From positions 5,844,707 through 5,908,706 of the forward strand of contig OZ037767.1 of NCBI GenBank assembly GCA_964035545.1: DNA of 64,000 bases, written 5' to 3'. The DNA is from Bugula neritina (lineage: Eukaryota; Animalia; Bryozoa). Under the pieces are notes generated by a model. That model ran no database searches. It saw nothing but the letters and a program-made list of their open reading frames with translations, and was not told where the DNA came from. A program made the position numbers and the translations under genes. Shown piece after piece: positions 7,727 to 38,636 of this stretch (its first letter is position 1; each line of letters begins with the position of its first letter).

Positions 7727-10700
7727 ATGGCTTCTACAAAGTATAAAATAGATTCTGTACTCGAAAAAGCAGGAGCTTTTGGAAGATATCAGTGGTTCCA
7801 GATTATTCTGGGTGCTCTTGGTTCTTTTATTACTGCCTGTCATTTTCTGGTTATAGTTTTTCATTCAATAACACCAAAACACAGGTAAGTGAATATCTTC
7901 CTTTTTTAGTGCATCAATATTTTTTGCATCACGACTTACTATCAACTGGCTTAATTATCTAAATTCTTTAAAACCTGATGGGAAAACCAAATACTTTATG
8001 TCATAACATTTTACATTTAACAGGCATGTTTACTTTCAGATGCAAACTACCAGACTGGGAAAATGACACCTTCTCCCTATTCAGTGATGTTCACAATCAA
8101 TCCATATATCAATGGATACCAGTTGATAAAGATGGAATACTTGATTCATGTAAAATATATACCAATAATAATGAGACTGTTGAGTGTGAAGAACATGTGT
8201 TTGATAAATCAGTGTACTGGGGAGTCACTCTAAATCAACAGGTAAGTAAAGCAATTTGATTTTGGATAGCTAGAGAGTTTGTGTGTACAAGAGAGAGTAA
8301 TAATTAGTTTACAGTAATAACTTTTAACATGTTGCATAGCATTTGCAACAGATGGTGATTAGAAGTTTAATTATTTTAATATCAGTGGTTCTTGTATATA
8401 ATTAGTCAAAAACTTGTGGCAGACTCAGGTTTTCATCAGACTAAAACTGGTAGTTGGACAGATTCCTCAAAAAGTTATAAAATATGAAGTTTTTAAAGAT
8501 TTTATATTTTTGATTGAATTTAAACTTTTTCTTACTTTGTGCAGAAATTATCTTCACCTGCACAATCCAAAATCCAACTTGCTATTTAACTAAGCTACCA
8601 ATGTCTCAGTTACAGTACTTTACTATAATATAAAAACTCATGCAAGTTTATAGTCACCATCCCTGTGAGAAAACCTCTGATGGAAGTATTTTGTTAAATC
8701 GGGCTAATGACTTATTCATATGGGGCACAGGAGCAATTATGACTGGATGCTCTTCCTATCATCACCAATGGCCTTTGTCAGGGCTCAAATCCATGACTTC
8801 GTGCTTACCATAAGCAAGCGCTCTAACCCCTAGACCACGCTGCTCTCCAGTACTTGACTATATATAATATGATAGAAATATACTTTATTTTTGTTATAGT
8901 TTGAAATGGTGTGTGGAAACAGCTGGGCAGGCACAACAGTAAAGGTAATATACACTTGTGGTCTAATGGTGGGAGCCTTTGGTGCTGGAATAATTGGGGA
9001 CAGGTAGTGTTGTATAATTATATTTACTTTATTTTTCACAACAATGCAACAGTAGTTCAACATTAGAGGAATACAAAGTTCTGTTCAGGATTTTAAATTG
9101 ATATACGTATTATTCATAAAGGAAGATAAAAATTACACATACTATATTTATGATAATGCACAGAAATCAAGAGTCAAATGTAGACTTCTGTTTTTTAATA
9201 AAATAATATGTAAAAATATTTTTAGCTTACTATATAGTAATAATATTCCAATATAATTCAGTATCTTTAAACATTTTTTCTTACATAAACTTAGTTTGTG
9301 TCAAATAAGAGAAAGAAAGCTCAATAAAGCCTAATAGACTGCAAAGAAGTTATAACTTTATTGGCAGGCGCGCTTAAATAGAGTACCAAAAGTACTAAAA
9401 TGGGGGGTCAAATTTTCTTTGGAGTATCACATCATTCACCCACCATTTAAGCTATCAGACCACTGCCTATATGATCTAACACACACACACGCACACGCAC
9501 ACGCACACGCACACGCACACGCACACACACACACACACGCACACACACACACACACACGCACACACATTAATAGTATTTATGTGCTAGCCTGTATTTTAA
9601 TCAGTATTTTTTTGTAAAAACACATTTCATATATACTTGTCATAAAGAGATAACTATTGTATAGGTTATCCTGGATATTGACTAGTAAAATAGTTAAGGG
9701 CATGCATACTTTCTCAAAACAAGCTAAAATTAGCCACTAACCACTATGGCAAATATTCAAAGAGCTCAATGAGGGTGTTAAGATTTAGATAAGTTAAAAC
9801 ATTATTGTCAATAAAATAGCTTTAGAATGTGATGGTGCCTCTATTTTAAATTGAAGCATCTAACACAACTATGAAGATTGTTATGTAAGAGAAATTGCTT
9901 ATTTCAATGAGGTTTTCTTGCTAAAATTTGAAGTGTTGAAATCTAAAAATTGATTTTATCTATTTTTATAAAACATACAAAGCAGTAATAACATAGTGTT
10001 GGTACCTTTAACTTAAACATTGTAATAGTGTTTTGTGATTCAATTTTTTTATAGATCATTAGTATCAGCAACTTTAAGGTTTATCATAGAATTAAAATAA
10101 GCAGCTAGCAATCAACATAAACACACCATCTGTTACATTTATACTTAGTTTTTAATTACTAAACAAAATTAATTTTTAATTTTTCTATGGTTTTCTTTGC
10201 TTTCCACTTTCTAAACTTTTAAATAATCTAGGTAGCTAAATTCAAATTATTAATGTTTGTTTTGAAAACCATCCCAATTTTTGCTAGCCACACCCAATAT
10301 TTTTGTGGTTACTGTTCTGTAGGATTGGCAGAAGGCTTGCTTTGATTGGTTGTTATTTTGTGGGAGGAGCAGCAGGCATAGTGGCAGCATTCTCAGTCAA
10401 CTACTACATGTTTGCAGCTCTGAGATTTATTGTTGGCATGAGTATGATTGGTATCCCACTGCTAAGAAGTATCATTGGTAAGAATAAACTCATGAATATA
10501 ATTCTTAAAGTGCATTTATAAATACGCTTTGCTTTTATGCATTGGCCAAGCCTAAAATTGCGCTTTCAAATCTGTTCAGCTTTGGTTCTATCACTCATTT
10601 GATGATGTTAAATATTTGGTTATTTTCAGCTTTAGAAATAACTGGACCTTCAAAGAGAAGCTTTACCTTTGCATTAACTTCGTTTTTTTGGCCCTCAGGG

Positions 10701-36800: not shown

Positions 36801-38636
36801 AAATTAGCAGCACTTACTTTAGTGACAGCTTATATTTGAGATGTCTTTAAGCCAATTATTAAAAGTGGAATTACAAAATTTAATACCTTTTGGTACTAGG
36901 GTTTGTTAAATGTAAAAACATTAAGCATAGGCTGAAAAAGCTGTTGGATACTAACTTATTGTTTGTAAAACAGAAGATTTGGCGCATATACATTTAGATT
37001 CGACTTTTTGTGAGAAAGGTGTATTAAAATTAAACAAACCTTAATACATAGTCACAAAATATGGGCTTTTATTACTAGTTTTGGTAGAGTTTGCATTCTA
37101 ACTCATTCCAATATTTAGCGGTTTTGGAGTTTCAATTAACAAAAAAATTACTATTTCAAAGTATTTCAAATTGTATAATGTAGCTTACTAACTCATTTTG
37201 CAATATAGACTCTGTTTTGATTTATTGCTCAAAGATATTTGAAGATGGGTTAAACTGAAACTGCTATTTACCTGCTCATTAAGAGTGACTCCCCAGTACA
37301 CTGATTTATCAAATACATGTTCTTCACACTCAACAGTCTCATTATTATTTGTATATATTTTACAAGAATCAAGTATTCCATTTTTATCAACTGGTATCCA
37401 TTGATATATCGATTGATTGTGAACTTCACCGAATGGAGAGAAGGTGTCATTTTCCCAGTCTGGTAGCTTGCATCTAAAAAATTGGTTGGGATTTTTTCCG
37501 GATATACATATATATATATATATATATATATATATATATATATATATATATATATATATATATATATATATATATATATATATATATATATATATATATA
37601 TATATATATATATATATGTAGTGAACATGTAAGTGAATGTTTAAGCACTACATCCTCTCTTTCTTTTCCAACACAACATTTTCTGATTAAAACAAACAAA
37701 TAGCTGTGACAGAGTTTGTTGACATATCAACCTAGCTGATAAAAACAGAGAATATAAAGATAGTGGCAGAGGTTTGTAGTTGAGCAGTAAATGACATGAA
37801 GCTAGTCTGGACAACTACTGATAAGATATCGGAGAGCTACATGTGTATGTATTACTAATATTAGGTCATACATCAACTGTTTGTATATGAAGATTTACTG
37901 GCCGTGGTAGTTAAAACGCAAGTGTACATGATTGAATGCAACTATAGTTTTCTCAAAAAGAAAATAGTTTATAGTTAGCAAAAAAATTGCAGCAGCATTC
38001 ATGTCACTTTTGCATGTATTTCTGATGGAAAATATTAGGCTTAGTATTTTAATACAAACTATAATATAATATTAATATATCCATCTAAGTATCATGGTAC
38101 CTGAGGTTTGACAAGGGCTATGCAGTATGTTGGTTCATAGTTATCTTTTCTAAAAATTTATTACCAGATAGTAGATATACTTTCCCTATACTCTATGCTC
38201 ATCAGTTTTTTCATTAACTAGTATAGCAATGATATCACGCAAAATTACATATTACACACTACATACTATATATATTACACACTACATACTATACATATTA
38301 CACACTACATACTGTACATATTACACACTACATACCATATATATTACACACTACAAACTATACACACATTACACATTACATACTATATACACATTACACA
38401 TTACAAGTTACGCATATAACTACTTTAGTTTAAAAGATACATGCTACAACTTGTATTAATATAACTTAAAATATAGCAATGATTTACCTGTGAGTTGGTT
38501 TGATTGAGTGAAAGACTATGGAGATGAAATGTAGAGGAGCTGCTATAGGACCTAGAGCTATAAGGAGCAGCTGCCGCCACTGATACACCCCCAGCGCCCC
38601 AACAGTTTCTAGCAGCACATCTATCTTAGACACCAT
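30867..38636 (-). CDS. SLC22-family organic ion transporter, paralogue E (10 exons, 555 aa)
   Basis: Minus-strand exons 38636-38488, 37473-37272, 36593-36490, 35806-35652, 35089-34918, 33953-33735, 33080-32854, 32302-32121, 31672-31515, 30966-30867 join in frame. [20 protein letters not shown]. Ends ...LIDEKKST*. Confidence 0.92.
32397..32452. repeat. 25-bp tandem duplication (tatagctaataatttaaaacaatgt x2)
   Basis: Directly visible. Confidence 0.85.
33984..34326. mobile_element. MITE, probably PIF/Harbinger (Tourist-like)
   Basis: About 70-bp terminal inverted repeats beginning gcctagggccacacgg with few mismatches, flanked on both sides by TTA (3-bp target duplication typical of PIF/Harbinger). 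343 bp, non-coding. Confidence 0.8.
37508..37617. repeat. (TA)n microsatellite about 35 nt upstream of the exon-2 acceptor of paralogue E
   Basis: Directly visible. Confidence 0.95.
38244..38405. repeat. Minisatellite, about 21-23-bp unit (atattacacactacatactatat)
   Basis: About 7 degenerate tandem units. Confidence 0.85.

What the first reader, a model, noticed from the sequence alone, without database searches (positions are those of the whole stretch)
8040..37473. The whole extracellular-loop exon is held about 95-97% identical across divergent, even inverted, SLC22 paralogues
Seen: the 202-nt exon 2 occurs at B 8040-8241, C 16138-16339, D 28984-28783 and E 37473-37272. By hand count it differs at only 5 positions between C and D, 9 between B and C, and 9 between D and E, including third-codon positions. 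Neighbouring exons are strongly diverged (exon 1: FKKYQWIQFGLVNAVTFIVPLHF vs LGRYQWQQLVLCALGPTTSALHF), and similarity collapses within a few bases of the splice sites. C and D belong to different subfamilies on opposite strands yet are the closest pair here. Known: this exon encodes the Cys-bridged, N-glycosylated large extracellular loop, usually among the more variable SLC22 regions and implicated in oligomerisation of OCT/OAT proteins. Inference: ongoing exon-restricted gene conversion yields a 'constant ectodomain, variable pore' transporter family. Possible explanations are preserved hetero-oligomerisation or a shared partner, or RNA/cDNA-templated conversion.
Basis: partly seen in the sequence, partly recalled or inferred. 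Interest (0 to 1): 0.85.

Follow-up and report, generated by a model that had tools for sequence, protein, structure and literature searches.

The report
Transporter genes sharing one copied exon
In a bryozoan (Bugula neritina species complex), ten neighbouring SLC22-type transporter genes that are otherwise only about 60% alike keep overwriting one another's outer-loop exon by DNA gene conversion; this is a clean new example of a known process, and the idea that the shared loop lets the proteins pair up is untested.

Summary
Observation confirmed and larger than reported. The window holds part of an 11-gene SLC22-like cluster. Ten genes share a 93-98% identical exon 2 (synonymous difference 0.13, against 0.59-0.78 in other exons); one gene (G3) has escaped. 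It is not an assembly artefact: independent contigs of public runs pile up 7-12 fold on the exon, and a second assembly of a sibling lineage shows the same pattern. Between lineages, exon 2 has lost its orthology signal (p=0.49) and clusters by lineage (p=0.005), while transmembrane exons pair by orthologue with 100% support. 17 of 36 site pairs fail the four-gamete test. One tract carries intron DNA between genes about 76 kb apart, which argues for DNA donors and against cDNA. Smaller converted tracts lie in exon 6 (intracellular loop) and mid exon 4, so 'constant ectodomain' is only part of the picture. Hetero-oligomer selection has no direct support. One loose end: the exon-2 consensus diverges between lineages more slowly than neutral conversion predicts. 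The scan already reported this cluster from the adjacent window (s1-466912) and noted similar exon-limited conversion elsewhere in this genome (unchecked). Verdict: new member of a known kind (protocadherin/Siglec-type regional conversion).

The parts
8040..8241 (+). Exon 2 of gene B (G8), most of the extracellular domain; homogenised copy
   Evidence: 8 differences from the ten-copy majority
16138..16339 (+). Exon 2 of gene C (G9); homogenised copy. Encodes three Cys (CKLP, SCKIY, ECEEH) and three N-glycosylation sequons (NDT, NQS, NET)
   Evidence: summed contig depth about 12 times the flanks in run X1; a 116-nt contig of run X3 identical to 16196-16311 at depth 349 versus 42-53 for single-copy contigs
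28783..28984 (-). Exon 2 of gene D (G10); homogenised copy, 2 differences from the majority
37272..37473 (-). Exon 2 of gene E (G11); homogenised copy
37474..37620 (-). 3' end of intron 1 of gene E, (AT)n microsatellite plus acceptor region. Homologous to the intron-1 end of G4 (C3:5806197), about 76 kb away on the other strand: a conversion tract that includes intron DNA
   Evidence: G4 of this genome matches G11 of the sibling lineage at 95% over 177 nt (much of it AT repeat) with a 25-nt exact non-repeat word, shuffle maximum 12; G4 of the sibling lineage has a G5-like intron end instead
335..4426 (+). Gene A (G7), exons 3-9. Its exon 2 (also homogenised) lies just before the window, at C3:5844469-5844670
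7727..13511 (+). Gene B (G8), exons 1-9 modelled, open frame, GT-AG introns
15871..21569 (+). Gene C (G9), exons 1-9 modelled, open frame
23462..29580 (-). Gene D (G10), exons 1-9 modelled, open frame
31515..38636 (-). Gene E (G11), exons 1-9 modelled, open frame
11507..11725 (+). Exon 6 of gene B (intracellular loop TM6-TM7): second converted segment, 88-94% identical among G4-G8; shorter tracts reach gene D (in 25915-26133) and gene C (in 18337-18555)
   Evidence: third-position runs with permutation p<=0.01; in the sibling lineage G9 exon 6 sits inside this group, in this genome it is on a long branch
10363..10422 (+). Mid exon 4 of gene B (end of TM3 to start of TM4): 60 nt identical to gene E 35707-35766; the same island is 89-94% alike among C, D and E
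   Evidence: coordinates converted by me from alignment columns 176-195

Best explanation
An old tandem cluster of 11 intact SLC22-like transporters undergoes frequent ectopic DNA-level gene conversion with short tracts. SHOWN: exon 2 is repeatedly overwritten among ten paralogues on both strands, in patchwork fashion, separately in two sibling lineages. A neutral estimate is 60-110 overwrites per site for each point mutation. INFERRED: exon 2 encodes most of the extracellular domain, which in human OCT1 is proposed to serve folding and trafficking and not substrate recognition, so copies are interchangeable and conversions are tolerated. Conversions into helices that set each paralogue's specificity are purged, or can no longer start because those exons are only about 60% alike. 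Continued exchange keeps exon 2 a 200-nt island of homology, which sustains more exchange. G3 left the pool once its exon gained 18 nt and diverged. Purifying selection on the loop protein (pN/pS about 0.2) acts on top of this.
For: Synonymous difference 0.13 vs 0.59-0.78. 17 of 36 informative site pairs fail the four-gamete test. Orthologues are no closer than non-orthologues in exon 2 (8.5 vs 8.6 differences, p=0.49); copies cluster by lineage (Kst 0.10, p=0.005; rank 2 of 256 label swaps). Lineage-specific alleles are shared by non-orthologues: 4T in 6/8 sibling copies vs 1/10 here; 10G 0/8 vs 4/10; 16G and 22G 3/8 vs 0/10; sibling G2 and G10 exons are identical. The TM-exon tree pairs orthologues at 100% support, the exon-2 tree is a star. 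Intron DNA moved between G11 and G4. Other converted tracts lie in the intracellular loop and TM3-TM4; none of 15 URAT1-cavity-equivalent positions falls inside an island. A neutral simulation at c/mu=80 reproduces the within-genome diversity (0.10-0.12) and the loss of orthology. ECD role: PMC10567722.
Against: Net synonymous divergence of exon 2 between lineages is 0.032 (bootstrap 0.011-0.057), while orthologous pS elsewhere is 0.17-0.29 and intron divergence mostly 0.08-0.20. Neutral unbiased conversion gives so low a value in under 1% of runs at 2muT=0.2, 3-5% at 0.12 and 15-21% at 0.08. No GC3 rise, which often goes with conversion (0.27 vs 0.34-0.39). The avoidance of pocket positions is not significant alone (my rough estimate: about 0.1 by chance). 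Selection against TM conversion versus a simple homology threshold was not separated. No expression data.
Confidence: 0.75

Rival explanations
1. Conversion is the mechanism, but identity of the loop is positively maintained because the paralogues must hetero-oligomerise or bind one shared partner or chaperone through it.
For: The large loop and its cysteines are reported as needed for oligomerisation of rat Oct1/Oat1 and human OCT2 (PMC11119549). Ten genes are kept in step and the consensus moves slowly between lineages.
Against: Protein-level selection cannot explain the slow change of silent sites. The copies carry 16 non-synonymous variants among ten genes here, and orthologous pN in exon 2 (0.02) equals that of other exons. 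G3 is intact and under purifying selection with a 70% identical loop. An OCT1 structure paper favours a folding/trafficking role. Other genes of this genome are noted with exon-limited conversion (unchecked).
Confidence: 0.13
2. Nucleotide-level constraint (RNA structure, splicing or regulatory element) holds exon 2 constant with little or no conversion.
For: Low net divergence between lineages; a 116-nt stretch is identical in run X3, which differs by about 6-10% elsewhere in the gene; excess of singleton variants (Tajima-type D -1.2, not significant).
Against: It cannot produce lineage-specific alleles shared by non-orthologues, loss of orthology, or the intron transfer. The exon folds worse than shuffles (z +1.15); no Rfam match. 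G3 has pS 0.58 to the others and other bryozoan-like loci are 83% and 71% identical. At most a weak add-on.
Confidence: 0.05
3. Conversion templated by spliced RNA/cDNA, which would restrict tracts to exons.
For: On average identity stops within a few bases of the splice sites. Hammerhead/retrozyme-like elements are noted near the cluster (unchecked) and a weak RVT hit lies in sibling locus L038.
Against: Intron sequence moved with the exon (G11 to G4 acceptor side; 15-18 nt words shared by G4, G5 and G10 on the donor side). All 11 genes keep introns 1 and 2, and the codons next to the junctions in exons 1 and 3 are not homogenised. A cDNA donor would not favour exon 2 over other exons.
Confidence: 0.04
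4. Assembly or polishing artefact that collapsed divergent copies.
For: Short-read metagenome contigs do show chimeric, internally deleted exon-2 copies (P0002, P0003, P0036, P0037), so the repeat troubles short-read assemblers.
Against: Each copy has 2-9 private or minority differences. Contigs of three public runs pile up on exon 2, including a lineage 6-10% diverged. The independent assembly GCA_010799875.2 shows the same pattern with different alleles. G4's intron tract is closer to the sibling's G11 than to this assembly's G11.
Confidence: 0.01
5. One recent wave of exon shuffling replaced exon 2 in ten genes from a single donor, with no ongoing exchange.
For: Star-like tree with many singletons.
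Against: After a single wave, orthologues in the two lineages would share private variants, or lineages would be cleanly split. Neither holds: p=0.49 for orthology and only two majority differences, with patchwork sharing. The splice phases are asymmetric (2 and 0) and the flanking introns are orthologue-specific.
Confidence: 0.02

Closest known systems
Ectodomain-specific gene conversion in clustered protocadherins (Noonan et al. 2004 as reviewed in PMC3966226; fugu data PMC1852091)
   Same: Tandem paralogues homogenised in one extracellular segment, lineage by lineage, while specificity-carrying segments stay divergent; explained by conversion plus selection against it elsewhere.
   Different: There the tract lies inside one large exon of same-strand genes and GC3 rises. 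Here it is a 202-nt exon between diverged introns, in a multi-exon 12-TM transporter, on both strands, with no GC3 rise.
Paired receptors Siglec-11/Siglec-16 and CEACAM pairs (PMC5701461, PMC5112662; abstracts only)
   Same: Extracellular part kept alike by conversion while the rest of the protein differs.
   Different: Two genes with a shared ligand-binding function; here ten genes, and the shared part is not the substrate site.
RHD/RHCE conversion-selection balance (Innan model, as reviewed in PMC3966226)
   Same: Multi-pass membrane paralogues in which conversion homogenises some exons and selection protects others.
   Different: There most of the gene is homogenised and one exon is protected; here the reverse, at near-saturated background divergence.
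SLC22 family (URAT1/SLC22A12, OCT1-3, OAT1, OCTN2)
   Same: MFS 12-TM fold, large Cys-containing glycosylated loop between TM1 and TM2, intracellular helices, conserved Arg at the URAT1 R477 position.
   Different: About 22-26% identity to all human subfamilies alike, so no subfamily or substrate can be assigned; three Cys in exon 2 plus one in exon 3; two full-text searches found no report of loop-exon conversion in SLC22.

Membership tests
SLC22 (OCT/OAT-like MFS transporters) | MFS fold with 12 TM helices | tested here: met
   Pfam Sugar_tr/MFS_1 on single exons and on sibling proteins; AlphaFold model of sibling orthologue P0043, pLDDT 72, best Foldseek hits URAT1/OCT at TM-score 0.75-0.77
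SLC22 (OCT/OAT-like MFS transporters) | Best sequence matches are SLC22 members, not sugar porters | tested here: met
   P0042 vs PDB: URAT1 E 9e-48, OCT3 2e-46, OAT1 5e-42; GlcP only 6e-9
SLC22 (OCT/OAT-like MFS transporters) | Large extracellular domain between TM1 and TM2 with conserved Cys and N-glycan sequons | tested here: met
   Exon 2 = residues 54-120, between TM1 and TM2; first, third and fourth Cys align with URAT1 Cys; three sequons visible in the translation. The loop itself is modelled at low confidence (pLDDT <50); disulfides and glycosylation not shown
SLC22 (OCT/OAT-like MFS transporters) | Transport of organic cations, anions or zwitterions | not testable with these tools
   needs uptake assays
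Regional concerted evolution by gene conversion | Synonymous sites homogenised in the tract and not outside | tested here: met
   pS 0.13 vs 0.59-0.78
Regional concerted evolution by gene conversion | Tract clusters by lineage, the rest by orthologue | tested here: met
   Kst p=0.005, orthology p=0.49; trees. Lineage clustering is significant but partial (no clean clades)
Regional concerted evolution by gene conversion | Patchwork sharing of variants among copies | tested here: met
   17 of 36 four-gamete failures
Regional concerted evolution by gene conversion | Raised GC3 in the tract (common correlate, not a requirement) | tested here: not met
   GC3 0.27 vs 0.34-0.39; minority changes 22 S>W and 22 W>S
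Regional concerted evolution by gene conversion | Neutral rate of consensus turnover between lineages | tested here: inconclusive
   observed 0.032; simulated 0.05-0.15 depending on the true split depth
Paired-receptor-type selected co-evolution | Shared domain binds a common partner or each other | not testable with these tools
   no interaction or expression data; no RNA run was listed

The most novel reading that the evidence does not exclude
The ten-copy loop is stabilised beyond neutral conversion: either conversion favours the majority sequence (a self-correcting consensus), or the identical loop is selected as a common docking surface that lets divergent SLC22 cores form mixed oligomers, with G3 as the natural non-member. 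Either would be new for transporters.
Probability: 0.15. Interest if true: 0.75.

Novelty: new member of a known kind. Interest (0 to 1): 0.42.

Why it matters
It is an unusually clean natural experiment. A 202-nt exon is kept about 95% identical among ten genes whose other exons are near synonymous saturation, with a built-in escaped control (G3) and a sibling lineage that dates individual events. It allows a direct estimate of ectopic conversion rate (about 60-110 times the mutation rate) and of how short a homology island can stay active. It also offers a test of a debated point in SLC22 biology: whether the extracellular domain is an interchangeable folding/trafficking module or an oligomerisation surface. 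Practical warning: exon 2 must be excluded from gene trees, primers and read mapping for this cluster.

Tried and rejected
Assembly artefact: rejected. RNA structure or ncRNA in the exon: z +1.15, no Rfam hit. cDNA templating: disfavoured. GC-biased conversion signal: absent. 'Pocket residues are especially variable': not seen. The search for related loci in metagenomes returned six 17-residue matches (L030-L035, some from human-gut metagenome assemblies); I judged them chance hits and did not read, compare or search them further. L024-L026 are the same gene from different samples (same intron flank), so they say nothing on paralogues. The Watersipora locus L039 shows tandem neighbours but only one exon 2 within reach. 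The SLC22 pair at C5:2.876-2.900 Mb is uniformly 83-92% alike over exon-sized and longer blocks, with the exon-2 block among the least alike, so no exon-2 island there. The single-sequence AlphaFold model was poor (pLDDT 46).
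Full report
OBSERVATION. A search of the whole genome found ten copies at 96-100% identity to gene C's exon and one at 73%, all within about 100 kb on contig C3. 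I fetched the upstream region and modelled 11 genes, G1-G11, each with nine GT-AG exons in one open frame; a short last exon was not modelled. Window genes A-E are G7-G11. Among the ten converted genes the mean nucleotide identity is 0.955 in exon 2 and 0.59-0.74 in the other exons; synonymous difference is 0.13 against 0.59-0.78. G3 has a 220-nt exon 2 with synonymous difference 0.58 to the rest, so silent sites in this exon are free to change.

WHAT THE GENES ARE. Exons hit Pfam Sugar_tr and MFS_1. A cluster look-up tied the exon to Bugula neritina protein KAF6019778.1. Three loci of assembly GCA_010799875.2 carry syntenic orthologues of nine of the genes, 89-98% identical in exons and mostly 8-20% different in introns. 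I infer that the window comes from a sibling lineage of the B. neritina complex, whose types differ by 8-11.5% in COI (PMC4183541). The sibling proteins match URAT1, OCT and OAT best by sequence and fold. Against Watersipora it is 55% identical, in the range of the other exons (45-69%).

ARTEFACT TEST. Contigs of three public runs were laid on gene C (5,951 letters). Run X1, near-identical to the assembly and perhaps its source, has about 12 times the flank depth on exon 2. Run X3 differs from the assembly by about 6-10% along the gene, yet holds a 116-nt contig identical to the exon core at depth 349 against 42-53 for single-copy contigs. Contig depth is a crude measure, but it fits 7-8 identical copies in an independent sample. 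The second assembly shows eight homogenised copies (3.3% mean difference) with its own alleles, and G3 has escaped there too.

MECHANISM TESTS. Within this genome 17 of 36 pairs of informative sites fail the four-gamete test. Between lineages, orthologous exon-2 copies are no closer than random pairs (p=0.49) and copies cluster by lineage (p=0.005). Alleles seen mainly or only in one lineage are shared by unrelated paralogues, and sibling G2 and G10 have identical exons although their orthologues here are only 61% alike elsewhere. A tree of exons 1, 5, 7, 8 and 9 pairs orthologues with 100% support (G4, which has the close paralogue G5, with 88%); the exon-2 tree is a star. Most tracts end at the exon edge because the introns are no longer homologous, but some carry intron DNA. 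G4 here has a G11-type intron-1 end, with a 25-nt exact match to the sibling's G11 (shuffle maximum 12), whereas the sibling's G4 has a G5-type end. That points to DNA donors. No intron is lost and neighbouring codons of exons 1 and 3 are not homogenised. From the within-genome diversity, the conversion rate is about 60-110 times the mutation rate per site (neutral island model), and a simulation at 80 reproduces diversity and loss of orthology.

OTHER TRACTS. A third-position run test found significant tracts in exon 6 (G4-G8, partly G9 and G10), mid exon 4 (G7-G11; 60 nt identical between G8 and G11) and exon 9 (G1/G2). Exon 6 of G9 sits within the converted group in the sibling lineage but not here. 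Exon 6 encodes the intracellular loop. The exon-4 island ends 3 residues before the position that matches URAT1 M214. None of 15 positions matching the URAT1 cavity (list from PMC12137875 plus R477) lies in an island, but this is only suggestive, and those positions are no more variable than other TM positions. Exon 8 is well conserved in protein yet mostly not converted, so protein conservation alone does not create an island.

HOW IT MOST LIKELY WORKS. Shown: frequent, short, DNA-templated exchange among ten clustered paralogues on both strands, still active after the lineage split. Inferred: loop exons are interchangeable, so their conversions survive; TM exons are protected by selection for distinct specificities and, by now, by low identity; the shared exon remains a recombination substrate because exchange keeps it alike. 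This is the conversion-selection balance described for protocadherins and RH genes (PMC3966226, PMC1852091). Oligomerisation through the loop is reported for rat Oct1/Oat1 and OCT2, but an OCT1 structure paper argues for folding and trafficking. Nothing here separates the two.

LOOSE END. Net synonymous divergence of exon 2 between lineages is 0.032 (0.011-0.057), lower than neutral conversion predicts unless the true split depth is under about 0.1. Large ancestral polymorphism, introgression, majority-biased repair or weak selection on silent sites could each explain it; only about 38 synonymous sites are involved.

NOVELTY. Two searches found no paper on SLC22 loop-exon conversion and one found none on SLC22 in Bugula; the library lacks most subscription journals. 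The process is well known. The scan had already described this same cluster from the adjacent window (s1-466912); that is the same DNA and not independent support. Several unchecked notes describe exon-limited conversion in other families of this genome, which suggests a genome-wide tendency and lowers the need for an SLC22-specific function. The joined spliced models were not sent to any search tool. Verdict: real, new member of a known kind, interest 0.42.

Noticed in passing
G000:C3:5802506-5802725 (L011); sibling L038:10615-10834: G3 is intact but has a 220-nt exon 2 that left the conversion pool in both lineages; natural control for loop function.
   Followed up: yes
window 18696-18866: Very high-copy short element in intron 6 of gene C (contig depth 44,000-95,000 in all three runs; 22-nt inverted arms 18698-18719 / 18840-18861). 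MITE-like.
   Followed up: partly
window 8632-8845, 11045-11235, 13965-14172, 29207-29422, 51709-51836: Dispersed repeat of about 200 nt in several introns and intergenic spots, 71-82% alike, both orientations.
   Followed up: no
window 33980-34330: Inverted repeat with 74-nt arms, 92% complementary, 203 nt apart, in intron 5 of gene E; probably a MITE. Also an inverted pair 6153-6359 / 6714-6919 made mostly of (AT)n.
   Followed up: partly
L037:1023-1223 (sibling G5 exon 2); L036 G10 exons 3 and 7; L038 G4 exon 7: One-base deletions in coding exons of assembly GCA_010799875.2; more likely assembly errors than pseudogenes, and the probable reason for its truncated protein models such as P0038.
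   Followed up: no
L029:1257-1410; P0002, P0003, P0037: JGI short-read contigs carry exon-2 copies with internal deletions or duplications, probably mis-joins caused by the repeated exon.
   Followed up: partly
window 15993-16128, 16364-16401, 16823-17061: Run X1 shows a second haplotype with dense differences around exons 1-2 of gene C (about 6% plus gaps in intron 2), while long stretches further downstream are homozygous.
   Followed up: no
L039 (Watersipora subatra OY755164.1): The related gene has tandem neighbours on both sides (exon 9 at 308-451, exon 1 at 40806-40949); a candidate second cluster to test.
   Followed up: partly
G000:C5:2900563-2900914 vs 2905471-2905822: A 352-nt block is 100% identical at two places 4.9 kb apart beside the C5 SLC22 pair; further duplicated blocks at 2908186-2917822 range from 76 to 95%.
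   Followed up: no
L038:20894-23147: About 3-kb insertion with a weak RVT_1 hit in an intron of sibling G2, absent from this genome's G2.
   Followed up: no
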